Part shown: positions 19,832 to 60,971 of the stretch, piece by piece
How the letters are laid out: each line of letters begins with the position of its first letter
Position numbering within the stretch: the stretch's first letter is position 1
Virus record (IMG/VR): IMGVR_UViG_3300024239_000011
Location: 1 to 64,000 of that record
Reading direction: 5' to 3' (one strand)
DNA length: 64,000 nucleotides
The notes under the pieces: generated by a model
Told to the model about the DNA's origin: nothing
What the model saw: only the letters and a program-made list of their open reading frames with translations
Databases searched by the model: none
Position numbers and translations under genes: made by a program

Positions 19832-19904
19832 GGGCAGAGACAGGATTTGAACCTGTGACCCTTCGCGTGATAGGCGAATGCTCAACCAACTGAGCTACTA
19901 CTGA
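19832..19904 (-). tRNA. degenerate tRNA-Asp-like gene, anticodon ATC
   Basis: D arm gctc/gagc, anticodon arm ttcgc-CTATCAC-gcgaa, T arm acagg-TTCAAAT-cctgt; mismatched acceptor stem, no encoded CCA; own TTGACA-N17-TATAAG promoter (19938-19966). Confidence 0.65.
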
Positions 19905-21273: not shown

Positions 21274-21510
21274 TCAGGCTGGTTTTCGTGTTTTCTTTAA
21301 TGTTAAATATTCATCTTCCCAAATATAAACAAGATTGTACATTTTCAATATTTTGTAATTTTACCATTGTAGATGCAAATATCCCCAAAAGTTTGCTTTG
21401 AACGTGTGTTTGTCTTGCCCGGTGGGAAAATACGTGGATTGCCATGCCAGTAATACCAAGGAATTCATATTAGTTTTTGGATCATAACCATCAACTTTAT
21501 AATAATTACC
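21274..21510 (-). pseudogene. decayed Vsr-like/PD-(D/E)XK homing endonuclease fragment
   Basis: Fragments YKVDGYDPKTN / YEFLG / YWHGNP / YNLVYIWEDEY in shifting frames. Confidence 0.6.
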
Positions 21511-21528
21511 ATTAGCCTGCCTTGTGGT

Positions 21529-22026
21529 TTATTTCTTGCGACGCTGGCGCGGTTTCGTTGGAATAGTTCCTTGATGGCATATTTGGGTTTCATCCATTAC
21601 CCTGAACGTCATGTTATTTTTTGCGGCAAATGCCATCGCAGCTTGCCATTTGGCATGATTTACAAGGATTGCTGCTTTATCACGCTTGCTGCGAGTTTCG
21701 TAAATAGATTTAGCGAAACCAGTTTCTTTAAGTGGTTTGATTTCAATAATTTCAGCATGTTGTTTACCATCTTTATCAACATATACAATCACATAATCAG
21801 GTATGTAAATTGTATGACGCCCGGTGAGTGGATTTTGATAAGGAATTTGAAGGGATTCGCTTGACCAATATAATATCGAGGGATGTTTGTCGAACAACAT
21901 ACAGGCGTGTAATTCAAGACCTGACCGATAATATATCGGATATGTCCCGATATATTTCTCCGGGTTTCGTGGGGTAAATTCGCCCTGGCGGTATTTGTCA
22001 GGATTATTTGGTATGTGTTTCGCCAT
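21529..22026 (-). CDS. head completion nuclease, T4 gp4-like (TnsA-like)
   Basis: G.FTPRNPEKY.G...YRSGLE...WSSE...IPY..P......YIPD...IEIKP. Confidence 0.85.
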   Translation of the reverse strand: MAKHIPNNPDKYRQGEFTPRNPEKYIGTYPIYYRSGLELHACMLFDKHPSILYWSSESLQIPYQNPLTGRHTIYIPDYVIVYVDKDGKQHAEIIEIKPLKETGFAKSIYETRSKRDKAAILVNHAKWQAAMAFAAKNNMTFRVMDETQICHQGTIPTKPRQRRKK

Positions 22027-24732: not shown

Positions 24733-24978
24733 ATGCAACAACGTTTTCGTATTGGACACCTCGTCCGCATCAACAAGCCGGGCTACGCCGAACATGGACT
24801 GAAAGCCATCATCACTGGTGTGAAAGTCACTGACCAGGGTGTGACTTATATTGCCCCCGTGTGGATGGGGGAACATGGGTCATGGACGCTCGAACCCGTT
24901 TTGGAACGCTTTTTGGTTTCCGAGGACGAGTATCAGGAAATCCGCCGTATGCGGAATAAACCGTGGGATCGAGAATAA
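24733..24978 (+). CDS. small KOW/SH3-like protein
   Basis: FRIGHLVRINKPG...GLKAIITGV. Confidence 0.6.
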   Translation: MQQRFRIGHLVRINKPGYAEHGLKAIITGVKVTDQGVTYIAPVWMGEHGSWTLEPVLERFLVSEDEYQEIRRMRNKPWDRE

Positions 24979-25022
24979 ACGTTTGTGCGATAAGGGCGGG
25001 AACAATCCCGCCCTTAACGTCG

Positions 25023-53014: not shown

Positions 53015-53827
53015 CTATGGCTTGAACTCTTCCTTCCATGTGCGTTCAGCAATGATGTCGGCTATTATTGTATATGATAGATTTGGGTAATGATTTCGTT
53101 GAATTTCTTTGCGCGTTTTACCGATGCGAAACAACATTCGAATATCATCCACGGCATCCCACGTCACTTTTTTGTTGGGGGATGGTGCGTTTACATTAGA
53201 AGCACGAATTTTTGCTATGCGGTCTTCTGGCGGACGACCATGTTTTTTACCCAATGCAGCTATACGACATTTCTCTTTATGTTCCGATGATTTAGGTTTT
53301 CCTTTCGCCGCCTCGGACATTTTTTTCTTGGTTTCTTCCGTGTGTGGCTGATCACGCACGGGGGGCTTAATACCGTTTATCAAAGCCCATTGACGCCGTT
53401 TTTCGCGTTCTTCTTTGGACCATGATAAACCGTACCGATGGTTGAGTTCGCCGCGCTGTTTGTCTCCAATTTTCTGCCGAGTCTCGTCCGAGCGAGGTTT
53501 GCCGGAAGGATTCGGCGGACGACTGTCAATACAAATATTGGTTAATATCCCATGGTCCTCATACCCTTTTCGTCCGTATTTCAGGATAAGCGCGCTTTCG
53601 ATTTCGAATGCTTCATCCTCATCCAAATTAGTTACTGCAAATTCAACAAACGGCATCATACCAGTACGTCGAATCGCTTCTATCTTACACCATTTCCGGC
53701 GGTTCTCTGTATTCTGATAGGTTTCAGATAGATGTTTCTTCCAACGATCCCCTTTTCCTTTTCCGACATAAAATGGTTCGTTGTTTCTTCGCGGATCGAG
53801 CAAGATGTAGACATAATATTCAGACAT
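53015..53827 (-). CDS. free-standing GIY-YIG-like homing endonuclease with NUMOD3 repeats
   Basis: YYVYILLDPR...PFYVGKGKGDR; EAFEIESALILKYGR; RSDETRQKIG and HTEETKKKMSEAAKGK repeats; TATAAATA at 53859-53866. Confidence 0.85.
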   Translation of the reverse strand: MSEYYVYILLDPRRNNEPFYVGKGKGDRWKKHLSETYQNTENRRKWCKIEAIRRTGMMPFVEFAVTNLDEDEAFEIESALILKYGRKGYEDHGILTNICIDSRPPNPSGKPRSDETRQKIGDKQRGELNHRYGLSWSKEEREKRRQWALINGIKPPVRDQPHTEETKKKMSEAAKGKPKSSEHKEKCRIAALGKKHGRPPEDRIAKIRASNVNAPSPNKKVTWDAVDDIRMLFRIGKTRKEIQRNHYPNLSYTIIADIIAERTWKEEFKP

Positions 53828-53958
53828 TTGTACTCCAATGTTCGATATAGTAACAATGTATTTATATAAGGCGAAACGCCAACATCTAAATAATGGTAGA
53901 AGAATTTAGCTGTGATAAGCAGCACATGATATAGTACCCGTAAGGGAAGGAGGTACAA

Positions 53959-54801
53959 GTGGATACACTTTCAAAATTCGGTTACTAAGGGAATTGGCTG
54001 AATTAAAATCCCTTTAATTGCTGGGACACCTCTCGGAGGCAATCAGCAGCCAAGCCCAGAAATGGGAAGGTTCATCGACTAGGCGAAAGCCGTACACTCA
54101 AGCGAGTGGAAATGGGGGATAGTAAACAGACAAGGATGGATTTATTCCTTACTGTTTACCGAAGATATAGTCAGGTCTTACAGGCGACTGTAAGCAGTTC
54201 GAAAGAACGGTGTGGGATTAGCGACTCCACATGAACATAAACGGTCCCAATGGGAGGTCAGACCGGTCGCGGCGGTCTTCTTATGCCGAAGCTCAAATAT
54301 CGCTTCCGCGTGCGCTTTGTTAACTTTGGTCCGATTGCGGGTGGTTTGGAATTGACCCAACAGGTTATGTCCTGCACTAAGCCGTCGATTACATATGCAG
54401 AAATACCACTTGATGCATACAACTCGAAAGCATACGTGCATGGTAAGCATGAGTGGTCAACTGTGGACATTACGCTGCGTGACGACATCACCAACGTGAT
54501 TTCGAAGCTGGTCGGACACCAAGTACAAAAGCAGGTAAACCACTTCCAACAGACCGCTTATGCGGCTGGTCAGAACTACAAGTTCAACACCATCATCGAA
54601 CAGATGGACGGCGGCAACGATGTGGTTCTCGAACAGTGGAACCTTGAAGGTTGTTGGATAACATCTGTTAATTGGGGCGATCTGGACTACTCGGCATCTG
54701 ATGCTCAGACAATTCAGATGACGGTTCGGTTTGATAACGCGACCCAGGCTGATGGTCTATTCACGGAAATTCCGAACCTTATCCCCGGTTTCCGCGCTTA
54801 A
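53959..54801 (+). CDS. tail tube protein (T4 gp19-like), split: exon1 53959-53982, exon2 54244-54801
   Basis: Spliced N-terminus MDTLSKFG|VPMGGQTGRGGLLMPKLKYRFRV; GGAGG RBS before GTG 53959; ITLRDD, EQWNLEGCWITSVNWGDLDYS..DAQTIQMTVRFDNA. Confidence 0.85.
53983..54243 (+). mobile_element. group I intron, 261 nt, no ORF
   Basis: 5' exon ends in U paired to G in P1 (aauucggu/gcugaauu); P aattgctggga, Q aatcagcag, R gttcatcgacta, S aagatatagtc; P7 gacta/tagtc; terminal G at 54243. Confidence 0.88.
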
Positions 54802-54816
54802 ACATAAGGGTTTGGT

Positions 54817-56517
54817 ATGCCAGAGTATGATTTACTCCGTCAGGTTGCGAGTGCAAAAGGTAACGATATCAGCGAAGCTGGTGGTACGGTTGCCGGTAAT
54901 GTACCCATTATTGGAAAAACTGCCGGGAATGCTATTGAGTCACTTTTGAGTCTGGGTGGAGAACGTCCCACTCGACTTAAAGACTCGACTCATGCATCCC
55001 GGCGGTTTTCTCTTGATCGACAGTCGTACACTGAAGTACCACGTCCTAAATTTCTATTCTGGGTTCAGTTTTTCGGTAATGGGTTTGCTGATCGTCAGAA
55101 TAGTTCGGCTTTGCGCAATACCGATCAAACACGTCGGTGGGCGGAAGGTATATCATTTCTTGTCAAATACATAGATAAACCAAAGATCACACCTCAGGTT
55201 GAAGAACTTTCACAATACGGAAAGAAACGTCTTATTCATACCGGGGTGCAATACGAACCTGTTACTCTACGCTTTCATGATTCGGTATCTGATGGTGCCC
55301 TGCATTTCTGGCAGGATTATTTTTGGTGGTATTTTGGTGATGCACGGGGCAAAACCCCTCTTTCATGGAATTACGACGCGACCAATATTGAAATGAACCG
55401 GGATGCCGGTGGATGGGGTTTTAACCCGACGAAAGATGCTGCGGTCGGCTCAACGGCGACCAATTTCTTTCTTACTGAAATGAAATTGTGGCAATTCTGG
55501 GGTGGATATTTCACCGCTATGAGTTTTATCAATCCGAAAATCACTTCATTTGATCATGATTCGAACGATTATGCCGAAGGCGCTGTTGGTTCGGAAATCA
55601 CAATGCAAATGAAGTACGAAGGTGTCATTTATCATCAAGAGAAGTCTTCAATTCGTCTACCGCCCGGTCGTGGTGGTATGACTGATGAAGAAAAACGTGC
55701 GTTCCTTCTTGATCTTGGTGATTATTACAATGTTCCGAATATTCGCCAGAATTCCGATCTATTCTCACGTATGAGTGGACAAGTTCTACAGGGTGTTCTT
55801 GACAACGTGTTGCGTGGTAATGGTGCGAATGCTGGTAGTGTATTAAAAAATGTTGTTATGGGTCAGATACCCTTCACTAAGTCCTCAATTAATGCATTGA
55901 AAAACCAAGTATTCAATAATACTATTTCGCGTATCGGATCATCGGCGTTGAATGTGTTTGGTAATTATAGTTTTGGCACGGCAACGGATAACCGGTTACC
56001 CAAATACAATGAAGTTTATGATCCTCGGCTTGTTTCATACAAGGCAACGAATGCGGATGCCCAGGCAGCTTCAGCAGTTTCGACTCGTGGAAAAGCTGGC
56101 GGGACAGATAAAATCATACCCGGCGTCGATTCATTCGGGATGGGTGGTAATACATTGGCGGCAGCTACGTCCGCGATGCAATCTGAAAACAAATCGTTTC
56201 TCGATTCGTTTGGAGGATCAATTGCATCGGCTGCCCGTGATGTGCGTGATGCGGTTGGTAGCGGTGTAGATTGGGTAGGCGATCAAATTAGTTCTGGTGC
56301 ATCCGTGGTTGGATCATTCTTTGATTCGGCAAGCGAAGAAGGTACTCGGCTCGCAGATTCCGGATACGCGGCATTAAATGATATGGCACGATCTTCCACG
56401 CAATACGGCACTGCCATTGCGTCCGATATGGGTGGTATGATTGCAGGACAACAGCAGCGCGATCCTCGAATGGCAGACAATCCGGTGATTTCCGATCCAT
56501 CAAAAGCTTTTGGTTAA
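54817..56517 (+). CDS. baseplate/tail-tube initiator-like protein (tube-fold N-terminal domain)
   Basis: PRPKFLFWVQF, VKYIDKPKIT..EELSQYGKKR, YEPVTLRFHD, ITSFDHD..DYA; directly after the tube gene. Confidence 0.6.
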   Translation: MPEYDLLRQVASAKGNDISEAGGTVAGNVPIIGKTAGNAIESLLSLGGERPTRLKDSTHASRRFSLDRQSYTEVPRPKFLFWVQFFGNGFADRQNSSALRNTDQTRRWAEGISFLVKYIDKPKITPQVEELSQYGKKRLIHTGVQYEPVTLRFHDSVSDGALHFWQDYFWWYFGDARGKTPLSWNYDATNIEMNRDAGGWGFNPTKDAAVGSTATNFFLTEMKLWQFWGGYFTAMSFINPKITSFDHDSNDYAEGAVGSEITMQMKYEGVIYHQEKSSIRLPPGRGGMTDEEKRAFLLDLGDYYNVPNIRQNSDLFSRMSGQVLQGVLDNVLRGNGANAGSVLKNVVMGQIPFTKSSINALKNQVFNNTISRIGSSALNVFGNYSFGTATDNRLPKYNEVYDPRLVSYKATNADAQAASAVSTRGKAGGTDKIIPGVDSFGMGGNTLAAATSAMQSENKSFLDSFGGSIASAARDVRDAVGSGVDWVGDQISSGASVVGSFFDSASEEGTRLADSGYAALNDMARSSTQYGTAIASDMGGMIAGQQQRDPRMADNPVISDPSKAFG

Positions 56518-58563: not shown

Positions 58564-59161
58564 ACTCTTCCGGGGTTTTTTCTTCGTCATCACCATCCTC
58601 AATGATGGTGGTAAATTTACCCTTAATGACAAAATCGATCAAGGTCTTGGCAGATTCTCGATTTGCCGCTGACGACTGGATAACGTAAAGTGTTTGACCT
58701 TTTGGCTCTAGATTGAAAATTGCATGTATTTGGCGTGCTGCTCGACTTGGGACTAGCTCACCAGTTTCAGTAATACGCATATCTTCTGCCGTGAGTGGAC
58801 GAAAATCACCCGGAACATCATCAGGGTCGTAGTTTTCGGGCACGAATACGAATTCTACCCCAGACTGCCGCACATAGAAACATGGACAATCCCGGAACGT
58901 ACTCTTGTAGTACGTTACATAGGGATCATTACGCAGACGCAAATCACCGGGTTTCTTACCCCAGTTATAGTCAGGGAACGTTTGAGCGAGATTTACCACA
59001 CCAACCGCTTTGACGAGCTTGGTGTATGAAATTTCAACGGCATTGTCCATCATGGCTTCGAGAAACGGTGCCATATGTTCATTTGTGCAATTGCCTATGT
59101 ATTGGAAGCCCTGTCCTTGGTCGGTACTCTCAATGAGATCAAGAATTTCTCGAATATCCAT
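58535..59161 (-). CDS. leader-bearing hypothetical protein (MDIREILDLIES)
   Basis: TATAAATA at 59183-59190; internal MRITE repeat of the leader. Confidence 0.65.
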   Translation of the reverse strand: MDIREILDLIESTDQGQGFQYIGNCTNEHMAPFLEAMMDNAVEISYTKLVKAVGVVNLAQTFPDYNWGKKPGDLRLRNDPYVTYYKSTFRDCPCFYVRQSGVEFVFVPENYDPDDVPGDFRPLTAEDMRITETGELVPSRAARQIHAIFNLEPKGQTLYVIQSSAANRESAKTLIDFVIKGKFTTIIEDGDDEEKTPEEFIAWLKTYL

Positions 59162-59219
59162 GTTTTACTCCGCGCAACGGAGTATTTATAAGAAAGCCCC
59201 CGCTTACGCGGGGCTTTCT

Positions 59220-60053: not shown

Positions 60054-60971
60054 ATGGAACTCGTTCAGTTCTTCCAGAAATTTAGCAGTGAAGAAATCTG
60101 CTACGCCTATCTTGAGCGGGTGGTGTGGTCTGATGGTCGCATCTGCCCCAAGTGCGGCGTCATCGGGGAATCTTGGCGGCTCAAATCCAAGCCCCACTAC
60201 TACGAGTGTAAGTGCGGACATCAGTTCTCGGTGACTGCAAACACTTTGTTCCACAAAACCCGCATCCCGCTGGTCAAGTGGTTCGCCGCTATCTTCCTAC
60301 TGGCGGATTCCTCCAAGGGCATCAGCACGAACAAAGCCGCCAAGTGGCTCGGACTGCACTATCAGACGGCTTGGCACATGACCCAGCGTATCCGTGCCAT
60401 GATGGCTGACGCCGATCCTGCCGTGCTGACCGGGATCGTGGAATTGGACGAAACCTATGTCGGTGGCAAACCGCGTTTCACTCGGGACGAGAACGGCGTG
60501 GTGGTCAAACACAAGACCGGACGTGGTACCGACAAGCAAGCGGTGTTTGTCGCCGTCGAGCGGAACGGCAACGTGCGGGCTGACCTCATAGACAGCCATG
60601 GTGTCACGGACATCAAGCCGCTGGTCAACCAGTGGGTAGATCGGGATGCCCAATTGATGACCGATGAATTGCCCGCCTACAAAGGGATCGGACGGGATTA
60701 CCGCTATCACCATGTTGTGTTCCACAAAGACCGCGAATATGCCCGTGACGGCGGAATCCACAACAACACCGCCGAATCCTTCAACAGCACGATCAAACGT
60801 GCTGTGATCGGCGTCTATCACTACGTCAGCAAGAAACACATGATTCGATATGTTGAAGAGGCGGTGTTCCGTTGGAACACCCGTCGCTCCACCAACATGG
60901 AGCGGTTCGATCTGATCTTGACCCAATCGGTGGGACGGCTCTTGCCGTTCAAGTACCTGACGGGAAATTAA
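60054..60971 (+). mobile_element. IS1595-family DDE transposase (element ends not defined)
   Basis: Zn ribbon CPKCG..ECKCGHQFSVTANTLFH; VELDETYVGGK; LMTDE; HNNTAESFNSTIKR; own TCGACA-N17-TACAAT promoter. Confidence 0.88.

What the first reader, a model, noticed from the sequence alone, without database searches (positions are those of the whole stretch)
53015..54801. ORF-less group I intron in the tail tube gene beside a divergent free-standing endonuclease: collaborative homing candidate
Seen: the ORF track misses exon 1 (GTG 53959, MDTLSKFG, then an in-frame TAA inside the intron). A 261-nt intron with P1 U.G pair, P/Q/R/S, P7 and omega-G restores FG|VPMGG. A GIY-YIG/NUMOD3 gene starts 132 bp upstream on the other strand, and both genes use back-to-back TAAATA boxes (53859-53866 and 53886-53892). 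Known: intron plus adjacent free-standing endonuclease partnerships have been described in phages, where the intron immunises the cut site. Inference: the nuclease cuts intron-less tube alleles near codon 8, and tail assembly depends on splicing.
Basis: partly seen in the sequence, partly recalled or inferred. Interest (0 to 1): 0.8.

Follow-up and report, generated by a model that had tools for sequence, protein, structure and literature searches.

The report
Split tail-tube gene beside homing nuclease
A giant phage's tail tube gene is interrupted after its eighth codon by a real self-splicing group I intron. Next to it is a DNA-cutting "homing" nuclease gene that sits at this same spot in at least 13 related phages, so this looks like a new natural example of an intron that relies on a neighbouring nuclease to spread.

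Summary
Rfam finds a group I intron (82.2 bits). The predicted splice, exon 1 53959-53982 (M)DTLSKFG joined to exon 2 from 54244 VPMGG, matches the uninterrupted N-termini of Atu_ph07, Phosso, PA5oct and about 160 metagenomic tube genes. The 270-aa divergent gene is an intact GIY-YIG/NUMOD3 endonuclease.

Findings from relatives:
- This endonuclease lineage sits divergently upstream of the tube gene in 13 lineages of Atu_ph07-like jumbo phages. Atu_ph07 itself keeps a nuclease-less remnant there.
- An ORF-less intron sits at exactly the same bond in 6 lineages, as three deeply diverged types. All 6 carry the endonuclease.
- No locus without the endonuclease has the intron.
- Seven lineages have the endonuclease but no intron, so the intron is not needed for the nuclease's self-immunity.

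The association is not significant once relatedness is controlled. Within one clade the intron copies look younger than their flanks, which suggests the intron is mobile.

Verdict: the intron is real, and a collaborative or trans-homing pairing is plausible. It is a new member of a known kind (S-PM2 psbA/F-CphI, T4 mobE/nrdB, ICP1 terminase). The cut site and the immunity role remain untested.

The parts
53015..53827 (-). Free-standing GIY-YIG/NUMOD3 homing endonuclease gene (270 aa; ATG at 53827, stop at 53015-53017)
   Evidence: It matches Pfam PF22945 (E 3.8e-8) and PF07460 (E 1.6e-8) and PHROG 314 'homing endonuclease' (E 1.5e-20). The catalytic positions Y7, Y20, G22, R28, H32, E77 and N97 are invariant across 9 homologues. 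Homologues sit at the same locus in 12 other lineages.
53859..53866 (-). TATAAATA box (T4-late-promoter-like), 31 nt upstream of the endonuclease ATG
   Evidence: The window holds 7 perfect copies against 1.29 expected. An equivalent box is present in only some relatives (L084, L193, L187).
53886..53892 (+). CTAAATA box upstream of the tube gene (late-promoter-like)
   Evidence: An nnTAAATAnn box lies 35-76 nt upstream of the tube start codon in 16 of 16 related loci.
53948..53953 (+). Shine-Dalgarno AGGAGG, 5 nt before the GTG start of exon 1
   Evidence: Read directly from the sequence. Relatives have GGAGG-type sites in the same place. There is no such site before ATG 54250.
53959..53982 (+). 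Tail tube gene exon 1: GTG + 7 codons, (M)DTLSKFG, ending in the splice-site U
   Evidence: Translation. It matches the N-termini of intronless homologues. The PHROG 4542 profile leaves 9 positions N-terminal of exon 2.
53983..54243 (+). ORF-less group I intron, 261 nt, IA2-like. Elements in window coordinates: internal guide 53997-54004; P3 54009-14/54114-19; P4 54019-24/54043-48; P5 54029-32/54036-39; P6 54049-51/54069-71; P6a 54055-58/54063-66; P7 54077-81/54168-72; P7.1 54082-84/54089-91; P7.2 54095-99/54104-08; P8 54122-29/54152-59; P9 54177-83/54188-94; P9.1 54197-200/54205-08; P9.2 54210-16/54226-32; omega-G 54243.
   Evidence: Rfam gives 82.2 bits. In a 5-sequence alignment, 35 of 69 consensus pairs show compensatory changes. 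There is an in-frame TAA at 53986-53988. No ORF inside the intron exceeds 42 aa.
54244..54801 (+). Tail tube gene exon 2 (VPMGG... 185 codons plus stop)
   Evidence: It matches PHROG 4542 'tail tube protein' (E 3e-61). It is 66% identical to Atu_ph07 gp127 and 47% to the PA5oct tube protein, which the record annotates as detected by mass spectrometry.
54817..56517 (+). Second tube-like gene (566 aa), a conserved downstream neighbour (context only)
   Evidence: It matches PHROG 13438 and 4542 'tail tube protein'. The same gene order occurs in all relatives.

Best explanation
The window comes from an Atu_ph07-like jumbo phage. Its gp19-type tail tube gene is split after codon 8 by a genuine ORF-less group I (IA2-like) ribozyme. 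Full-length tube protein requires RNA splicing, which joins ...TTC GGT to GTC CCA....

The divergent neighbour is an intact free-standing GIY-YIG/NUMOD3 homing endonuclease. It belongs to a lineage dedicated to this one locus, immediately upstream of the tube gene.

Most likely mechanism (inferred): during mixed infection the nuclease breaks the DNA of related phages in or close to the 5' end of their tube gene. Repair then copies from the donor genome. The intron, which has no mobility gene of its own, lies only 155 bp from the nuclease gene and is carried in by this repair. This is collaborative homing if the cut is at the insertion site, and trans homing if it is only nearby.

The nuclease does not depend on the intron, because it persists next to intronless tube genes. 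The intron appears to depend on the nuclease.

Shown: the intron, the junction, the nuclease domains, the locus fidelity and the co-occurrence. Inferred: cleavage, its position, immunity and the direction of transfer.
For: Intron and junction:
- Rfam gives 82.2 bits.
- The junction equals the intronless homologues.
- 35 of 69 pairs show compensatory changes. The internal guide co-varies with the exon: TTC GGT with GCUG, against TTT GGT with GCCA in L190.

Nuclease:
- Domains and invariant catalytic residues are intact.
- Homologues lie divergently upstream of the tube gene in L181, L193/L421, L419, L188, L190, L084, L182, L184, L185, L186, L187 and L224.
- Of the best 80 homologous loci kept from IMG/VR, only 3 adjoin a tube gene: the window's own phage, L193 and L224. 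The lineage is therefore locus-specific.
- Atu_ph07 keeps a nuclease-less remnant at the same place.

Intron distribution:
- The intron sits at the identical bond in 6 lineages, all with the nuclease.
- None of about 160 nuclease-free loci has it.

Signs of movement:
- Within clade B, intron copies are 89-94% identical. They are still 86-88% identical at unpaired columns that vary between intron types. Exon third positions are 44-56% identical and the nuclease gene 62-73%.
- L181 and L224 have alignable flanks, but about 2.2 kb spanning the intron, the nuclease gene and three small downstream ORFs does not align.

The mechanism has experimental precedents: PMC6083498, PMC2790892 and PMC3984707.
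Against: - There is no cleavage or splicing data.
- Seven lineages carry an intact nuclease with no intron, so the intron is dispensable for the nuclease.
- On the tube tree, intron and nuclease each need about 4 changes. Independent contrasts are too few for significance. Within the Atu_ph07-like clade the count is 5 of 12 against 0 of 7, which gives an uncorrected Fisher p of about 0.07 (my arithmetic).
- The nuclease tree roughly tracks the tube tree, so much of the inheritance looks vertical.
- In clade B the intron is far more similar than the nuclease gene, and there is no co-conversion gradient in the flanking exon. The two elements therefore did not simply travel as one unit.
- The three intron types are as distant from one another as from introns in other genes of unrelated phages.
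Confidence: 0.6

Rival explanations
1. Strict collaborative homing. The nuclease recognises the intronless exon junction (around codon 8), and the intron protects its own genome by splitting that site.
For: - The arrangement is identical to S-PM2 psbA/F-CphI, where this mechanism was shown (PMC6083498).
- The insertion site lies in the most conserved N-terminal motif, KFG|VP.
- All 6 intron-bearing lineages have the nuclease.
Against: - Seven lineages have an intact nuclease beside an uninterrupted junction. Their junction sequences show no consistent difference from nuclease-free alleles, so immunity there must come from something else.
- The C-terminal (DNA-binding) domains differ between nuclease clades, which implies different targets.
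- The cut site cannot be tested here.
Confidence: 0.3
2. Trans homing or hitch-hiking. The nuclease cuts somewhere else near its own insertion point (the tube 5' region or the sheath-tube spacer of nuclease-free phages). The intron is only co-converted because it lies within recombination distance, and it gives no immunity.
For: - T4 MobE mobilises the nrdB intron without cutting at the insertion site. Co-conversion there reaches up to about 2 kb (PMC2790892).
- The intron lies 155 bp from the nuclease gene.
- The nuclease persists without the intron in 7 lineages.
Against: - In clade B the intron copies are much more alike than the intervening spacer or the nuclease gene. Simple co-conversion from a distant break would not produce this.
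- No co-conversion gradient is seen.
Confidence: 0.3
3. Endonuclease turnover. The intron once carried its own endonuclease ORF, which was later lost, and an unrelated free-standing nuclease has since settled next door. On this view the present adjacency is a historical leftover, not a partnership.
For: - This was proposed for ICP1-type loci (PMC10448857).
- Related IA2 introns in other phages do carry or adjoin ORFs, for example phiKZ gp72 and a hypothetical ORF in Xanthomonas phage DES1.
- Nuclease cassettes do swap at this locus (L181 against L224).
Against: - None of the 6 intron copies, across three types, shows an ORF or an ORF remnant. All are 253-264 nt.
- The nuclease lineage is older and more widespread at this locus than the intron.
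Confidence: 0.1
4. Coincidence. Two independent selfish elements each favour conserved late structural genes, and there is no functional link between them.
For: - The association is not statistically significant after phylogenetic control.
- The sheath-tube spacer attracts other nuclease-like genes, for example a T5orf172 gene in L189.
Against: - The count is 6 of 6 intron lineages (three intron types) with the nuclease, against 0 of about 160 loci without it.
- The intron needs at least 3 changes on well-supported branches of the tube tree, always inside nuclease-bearing lineages.
Confidence: 0.1
5. There is no functional intron. The tube gene simply starts at ATG 54250, and the upstream ribozyme-like sequence is a relic.
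For: An ORF from ATG 54250 exists, and gene callers use it.
Against: - Exon 1 with a strong ribosome-binding site restores the universally conserved (S/N/D)KFG|VP N-terminus.
- There is no ribosome-binding site before 54250.
- The ribozyme core is intact and is maintained by compensatory changes in 5 sequenced copies.
Confidence: 0.03

Closest known systems
Collaborative homing: cyanophage S-PM2 psbA intron with free-standing F-CphI (Zeng, Bonocora & Shub 2009, as described in PMC6083498 and PMC3984707)
   Same: [quoted passage not shown] The intron has no mobility gene of its own.
   Different: - F-CphI is an Endo VII-type enzyme, whereas this one is GIY-YIG/NUMOD3.
- The host gene is psbA there and the tail tube gene here.
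- For S-PM2, cleavage at the insertion site and protection by the intron were shown experimentally. Here neither is tested.
- Here 7 related phages keep the nuclease without the intron.
Trans homing: T4 MobE and the nrdB intron with defunct I-TevIII (Wilson & Edgell 2009, PMC2790892)
   Same: A free-standing endonuclease encoded next to an intron-containing gene mobilises a non-autonomous intron by co-conversion. Proximity is the key requirement.
   Different: - MobE is an HNH enzyme and nicks away from the insertion site.
- The nrdB intron still holds a dead endonuclease ORF, whereas the tube intron has none.
ICP1 T5orf172 endonuclease gene beside the terminase N-terminal exon (Barth et al. 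2023, PMC10448857)
   Same: In a virulent phage, an endonuclease gene lies adjacent to a short, easily missed N-terminal exon of an essential late gene that is split by an intron.
   Different: The nuclease family and the host gene differ. That paper raises endonuclease turnover as an alternative origin.
Phage IA2 group I introns (T4 td/nrdB/sunY type; phiKZ gp71-73 intron; terminase introns of Acinetobacter phage YMC13/03/R2096 and Xanthomonas phage DES1)
   Same: The catalytic core of the window intron is 79-83% identical to them. The P7.1/P7.2 extension and the conserved GUUCANCGACUA and GAUAUAGUC elements are shared.
   Different: - The host gene and insertion site differ.
- Here there is no intron ORF and no P2, in contrast to the L181- and L190-type tube introns, which do have P2.
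T4 Seg-type free-standing GIY-YIG endonucleases (reviewed in PMC2988022)
   Same: Both are free-standing GIY-YIG enzymes inserted between conserved genes, with sporadic presence or absence among relatives and modular DNA-binding tails.
   Different: The GIY-YIG domain here matches the LEM-3-like Pfam model, and by sequence it finds no I-TevI structure in the PDB. This lineage is tied to one locus across deep divergence.

Membership tests
Group I intron (Rfam RF00028), IA2-like | Covariance-model score above the curated gathering threshold | tested here: met
   The window scores 82.2 bits against a gathering score of 50. The copies in L181, L188 and L190 score 85.5, 92.6 and 92.2 bits.
Group I intron (Rfam RF00028), IA2-like | P1 formed by the 5' exon end and an internal guide, with a U.G wobble at the splice site; a terminal omega-G | tested here: met
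   AAUUCGGU (53975-82) pairs with GCUGAAUU (53997-54004), giving U53982.G53997, and the intron ends in G54243. The guide co-varies with the exon in L190. All 5 aligned copies end in G.
Group I intron (Rfam RF00028), IA2-like | Conserved core helices P3-P9 maintained by compensatory substitutions | tested here: met
   RNAalifold on 5 copies finds 69 pairs, of which 35 have changes on both sides. The P7 strands are invariant, so they provide no covariation evidence.
Group I intron (Rfam RF00028), IA2-like | Excision restores an uninterrupted, conserved reading frame | tested here: met
   FG|VP equals the junction in Atu_ph07, Phosso, PA5oct and about 160 other loci.
Group I intron (Rfam RF00028), IA2-like | GTP-dependent self-splicing | not testable with these tools
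   This needs in vitro transcription and splicing, or RNA data.
GIY-YIG homing endonuclease (free-standing) | GIY-YIG catalytic domain with its conserved Tyr, Tyr, Arg, His, Glu and Asn residues | tested here: met
   It matches PF22945 (E 3.8e-8). Y7, Y20, R28, H32, E77 and N97 are invariant in 9 homologues. The mapping of these positions onto I-TevI residues rests on my own knowledge.
GIY-YIG homing endonuclease (free-standing) | Sporadic presence, absence or decay among close relatives at a fixed locus | tested here: met
   The gene is present in 13 lineages and absent in Phosso. Atu_ph07 has a remnant holding only the C-terminal half. Cassette replacement is seen between L181 and L224.
GIY-YIG homing endonuclease (free-standing) | Site-specific cleavage of alleles that lack the element | not testable with these tools
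   This needs a cleavage assay.
Collaborative homing pair | An ORF-less intron and a free-standing endonuclease gene adjacent in the same genome | tested here: met
   They lie 155 bp apart in the window. The same layout occurs in 5 further lineages.
Collaborative homing pair | The endonuclease cuts the intronless allele at the intron insertion site | not testable with these tools
   A comparison of junction sequences gave no signal.
Collaborative homing pair | The intron prevents self-cleavage (immunity) | tested here: inconclusive
   Seven lineages with an intact nuclease and an uninterrupted junction show that the intron is not required in general. This says nothing direct about the window's own enzyme.
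Collaborative homing pair | Co-inheritance of the intron with the endonuclease | tested here: inconclusive
   The count is 6 of 6 against 0 of about 160, but phylogenetically independent contrasts are too few. In clade B the intron and the nuclease gene show different degrees of divergence.
T4 gp19-type tail tube protein | Profile match and conserved position in the sheath-tube module | tested here: met
   It matches PHROG 4542 (E 3e-61). The Pfam PF06841 match is below its cut-off (25.2 against 28.2). Synteny with sheath, tube and tube-2 genes holds in relatives.

The most novel reading that the evidence does not exclude
The sheath-tube junction of Atu_ph07-like jumbo phages may be a natural series that captures the whole life cycle of a nuclease-intron partnership. 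In this reading, a locus-bound GIY-YIG nuclease came first. Its breaks at one phosphodiester bond of the tube gene then repeatedly recruited ORF-less ribozymes, giving three deeply diverged intron types at the same bond. The intron now spreads between nuclease-bearing phages on its own schedule, without dragging the nuclease gene. Nuclease decay (Atu_ph07) and cassette replacement (L224) complete the cycle. That would be comparative evidence for the nuclease-first route to mobile introns.
Probability: 0.25. Interest if true: 0.75.

Novelty: new member of a known kind. Interest (0 to 1): 0.55.

Why it matters
Practical point: gene callers truncate this tail tube gene in every copy in the public assemblies, always starting it at ATG 54250. 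The 8-codon first exon and the intron are also missed in the intron-bearing relatives L181, L188 and L190. Annotation of jumbo-phage structural genes therefore needs an intron-aware step.

Biological point: only a few nuclease-plus-ORF-less-intron partnerships are known (S-PM2, T3/T7-like phages, T4 mobE, ICP1). The order of events that creates mobile introns is still argued. This locus offers 13 nuclease-bearing lineages, 6 of them with the intron (three intron types), together with one decayed nuclease and several clean intronless, nuclease-free relatives. Two of those relatives (Atu_ph07 and Phosso) are cultured phages. That combination makes the target site, the immunity question and the direction of transfer directly testable.

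Tried and rejected
- Nucleotide search of the region against GenBank phages found no match. The phage is known only from metagenomes.
- I looked for a synonymous "immunity" signature at the junction in nuclease-plus, intron-minus alleles. The Gly codon is GGC in 4, GGT in 2 and GGA in 1, against a mixed usage in 97 nuclease-free alleles. There is no consistent difference.
- I tested whether the nucleases of the two first-found intron lineages (window and L181) are sisters, as expected if nuclease and intron move as a unit. The tree instead pairs the window with intronless L184 (support 90/91). The AU test does not reject either arrangement (p 0.28).
- Independent-contrast test of intron against nuclease: only 3-4 pairs are available, so it cannot reach significance.
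- I looked for a co-conversion gradient in exon 2 next to the intron in clade B and found none.
A more specific pattern recovered only tube loci that also have the nuclease.
- The window holds no second copy of the nuclease and no second intron, even at relaxed thresholds.
- The PA5oct gene annotated "Hef-like homing endonuclease" upstream of its tube gene has no Pfam match, so I did not count it.
- Candidate truncated tube proteins P0154 and P0135 turned out to be start-codon miscalls of intronless genes.
- P0068, P0091 and P0097 start with MVPLGG and probably carry the L181-type intron.
- Bonocora & Shub 2009 could not be read, so it is cited only through reviews.
Full report
**1. What is in the window**

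Rfam's group I intron model matches 53904-54194 on the plus strand at 82.2 bits (gathering score 50, E 2e-19). The model's 5' end is misplaced. Read against the sequence, the intron is 53983-54243 (261 nt).

- Exon 1 is GTG 53959-53982, (M)DTLSKFG. AGGAGG at 53948-53953 precedes it, and an in-frame TAA at 53986-53988 follows it.
- Exon 2 starts at 54244, VPMGG....
- The ORF list only sees ATG 54250, and the gene callers behind the public assemblies made the same call.
- P1 pairs the exon end AAUUCGGU (53975-82) with GCUGAAUU (53997-54004). This puts U53982 opposite G53997. The intron ends in G54243.
- GGGA (53989-92) can pair with UCCC (54245-48) to form a short P10.
- The core elements are P3 to P9.2, with P7.1 and P7.2 hairpins between P7 and P3'. 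In my own knowledge that arrangement is the IA2 signature. The helices are mapped.
- No ORF longer than 42 aa lies inside the intron.

**2. The splice junction is confirmed by homology**

The closest cultured relatives are:

| Phage | Tube protein identity to window |
|---|---|
| Agrobacterium phage Atu_ph07 | 66% |
| Sinorhizobium phage Phosso | 58% |
| Pseudomonas phage PA5oct | 47% |

Their uninterrupted tube genes begin MATLNKFGVPMGG, MAETLSKFGVPLGG and MATLDKFGVPSSAG. That is exactly exon 1 joined to exon 2.

All 80 IMG/VR loci and 80 metagenome loci recovered with exon 2 read straight through ...KF(G/T)|VP.... PHROG 4542 'tail tube protein' matches exon 2 at E 3e-61, starting at profile position 10, which leaves room for the 8-residue exon 1.

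The alternative that the protein starts at ATG 54250 would delete the most conserved N-terminal motif, and that ATG has no ribosome-binding site.

**3. The neighbour**

The gene at 53015-53827 (-) encodes 270 aa with a LEM-3-like GIY-YIG domain and NUMOD3 motifs. It also matches PHROG 314 'homing endonuclease'.

In an alignment of nine homologues the catalytic-type positions Y7, Y20, G22, R28, H32, E77 and N97 are invariant. The window has no second copy.

A perfect TATAAATA lies 31 nt upstream of its ATG on its own strand. The window holds 7 such sites against 1.3 expected. The tube gene has CTAAATA at 53886-92, and an nnTAAATAnn box lies 35-76 nt upstream of the tube start in 16 of 16 related loci.

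**4. Relatives change the picture**

The window's phage occurs nearly unchanged in at least 8 samples, always with both elements. More distant relatives are more informative.

Homologues of the nuclease (41-53% identical) were traced to their contigs. In every case examined the gene lies divergently, immediately upstream of a tube gene:
- L181, L182 and L184
- L185, L186 and L187
- L188 and L190
- L084
- L193 and L224
- L419 and L421

Of the best 80 nuclease-homologue loci kept from IMG/VR, only three adjoin a tube gene: the window's own phage, L193 and L224. The tube-associated enzymes are therefore a locus-specific lineage. On the nuclease tree that lineage has 87/91 support, apart from the truncated L084 copy.

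Atu_ph07 was scored at first as nuclease-free. It actually carries an unannotated 82-aa ORF at the same place and in the same orientation. This ORF matches only the C-terminal NUMOD3/DNA-binding half of the family (E 4e-11 to L193). It is a decayed copy.

**5. Intron distribution**

A group I intron sits at exactly the same bond (GGT|GTY, FG|VP) in these lineages:
- the window
- L181 (85.5 bits)
- L188 (92.6 bits)
- L190 (92.2 bits)
- L193, which is the same phage as L421
- L419

The copies fall into three types: the window type; L181/L193/L419/L188, which are 89-94% identical to one another; and L190. Between types, identity is 61-66% overall and 72-79% in the core. The window's core is at least as close to introns in other genes of unrelated phages:

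| Intron | Core identity to window |
|---|---|
| Terminase intron, Acinetobacter phage YMC13/03/R2096 | 83% |
| Xanthomonas phage DES1 | 81.5% |
| phiKZ gp71-73 | 79.5% |

An alignment of five copies gives 69 consensus pairs, 35 with compensatory changes. The internal guide changes together with the exon in L190.

The tally is:

| State | Lineages |
|---|---|
| Nuclease + intron | 6 |
| Nuclease, no intron | 7 (L084, L182, L184, L185, L186, L187, L224) |
| Nuclease remnant, no intron | 1 (Atu_ph07) |
| No nuclease, no intron | Phosso, PA5oct, L189 and about 160 metagenomic loci |
| No nuclease, with intron | none |

In the 7 nuclease-only lineages the spacer from the nuclease start to the tube start is only about 70-135 nt, too short for an intron.

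**6. How strong is the link?**

On the tube tree the intron needs 4 changes, 3 of them forced by well-supported branches, and the nuclease also needs 4. Intron-bearing lineages lie in two of the three nuclease-bearing clades. Independent contrasts number only 3-4, so no significance is possible. Within the Atu_ph07-like clade the raw count is 5 of 12 against 0 of 7. The association is consistent and has no counter-example, but it is not proven.

The nuclease tree is roughly congruent with the tube tree: the window pairs with L184, and L185 with L186. The nuclease has therefore largely been inherited with the locus.

There are also signs of exchange.
- L181 and L224 have the most similar flanks (tube 80%, Ro-like gene 72-78% at the nucleotide level). 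Yet the 2.2 kb between them, covering the intron, the spacer, the nuclease gene and three small ORFs, does not align at all. The two nucleases are 39% identical.
- In clade B, intron copies are 89-94% identical, and 86-88% identical at unpaired columns that are free to vary between types. The flanks are far more diverged:

| Region | Nucleotide identity |
|---|---|
| Intron | 89-94% |
| Exon 2 | 70-80% |
| Exon 2, third codon positions | 44-56% |
| Spacer plus exon 1 | 58-65% |
| Nuclease gene | 62-73% |

The introns therefore look younger than their surroundings, which points to intron mobility. There is no co-conversion gradient in the exon, and the nuclease gene did not travel with the intron. 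I cannot explain this fully.

**7. Mechanism**

The best-supported reading is a nuclease-driven, non-autonomous intron. The locus-bound GIY-YIG enzyme breaks related genomes in or near the tube 5' region. Repair from the donor then installs the intron, and sometimes the nuclease cassette as well.

Two experimentally established models fit:
- Collaborative homing: the cut is at the insertion site and the intron protects the host genome. This was shown for S-PM2 F-CphI (PMC6083498, PMC3984707).
- Trans homing: the cut is nearby but not at the insertion site. This was shown for T4 MobE with the nrdB intron, where co-conversion reaches up to about 2 kb (PMC2790892).

Sequence alone cannot choose between them. 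Seven intact nucleases sit beside uninterrupted junctions, so the intron is not needed for self-immunity in general. A search for a synonymous immunity signature at the junction found nothing. The C-terminal domains differ between the three nuclease clades, so their targets may differ too.

A third idea, endonuclease turnover (PMC10448857), is not favoured. None of the six intron copies has an ORF or an ORF remnant.

**8. Novelty**

The kind of system is known. What is new:
- the host gene (tail tube);
- the phage group (Atu_ph07-like jumbo phages known only from metagenomes);
- the enzyme family in this role (GIY-YIG/NUMOD3);
- above all, the comparative depth at one locus.

No paper in the held library describes a tail-tube intron in this group.

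I rate this a new member of a known kind, with interest 0.55. Nothing in this work required a referred step.

Noticed in passing
whole window; source contigs ENA ERZ27245855 k141_178484 and IMGVR_UViG_3300024239_000011: The window's phage lies on an 869,618-bp assembly contig and on a 543,035-bp IMG/VR contig. Related nuclease genes lie on 853,705-bp and 638,563-bp contigs. If the largest contigs are single genomes, they would exceed the largest published phage genomes (about 735 kb, from my own knowledge). Chimeras or concatemers are not excluded.
   Followed up: no
L001 3647-3895 (-), approximately NC_042013.1 93022-93270: Atu_ph07 has an unannotated 82-aa ORF just upstream of its tail tube gene. 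It is the C-terminal NUMOD3/DNA-binding half of the tube-locus endonuclease and has no GIY-YIG domain. It is either a decayed or a domesticated remnant.
   Followed up: partly
window 60054-60971 (+): A 305-aa ORF carries IS1595-type Zn-ribbon and DDE transposase domains inside the phage structural region.
   Followed up: no
window 19838-19899 (-): A tRNA gene is found here (Rfam 49.3 bits). Its anticodon was not examined.
   Followed up: no
L185 5246-5323 and L186 5645-5736: Rfam suhB/mmgR sRNA hits (48.7 and 59.2 bits) lie between the endonuclease and the sheath gene in two related phages. This would be an alphaproteobacterial-type sRNA carried by a phage.
   Followed up: no
L272 about 1501-1612 (Acinetobacter phage YMC13/03/R2096, NC_027332 about 21422-21533): An unannotated group I intron core, 83% identical to the window's, lies between a free-standing HNH endonuclease gene and the annotated terminase large subunit gene. 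This may be another nuclease-plus-intron pair with a missed first exon.
   Followed up: no
L189 3597-3887 (+): In one relative, a 96-aa T5orf172/MUG113 gene occupies the spot just upstream of an intronless tube gene, on the same strand. The sheath-tube spacer may be a general landing site for nuclease-like genes.
   Followed up: partly
L190 8233-8555 and beyond: The terminase large subunit of this relative is 854 aa and contains a LAGLIDADG_3 domain, so it may hold an intein or an endonuclease insertion.
   Followed up: no
window, seven sites (7571, 11904, 13185, 28688, 42760, 53859, 59183): TATAAATA, the T4 late-promoter consensus (my own knowledge), occurs 7 times against 1.3 expected. The copy at 59183-59190 (-) lies 22 nt upstream of the ORF that starts at 59161.
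   Followed up: partly
samples JGI 3300034072 / 3300034073: Three different relatives occur in the same sample, 3300034072: the window's phage (nuclease plus intron), L193 (nuclease plus a different intron type) and L224 (nuclease, no intron). This gives an opportunity for mixed infection and homing.
   Followed up: no
window 24903-25020 (+): There is a weak PrrB/RsmZ sRNA match (27.2 bits against a gathering score of 44, E 0.025). It is probably chance.
   Followed up: no
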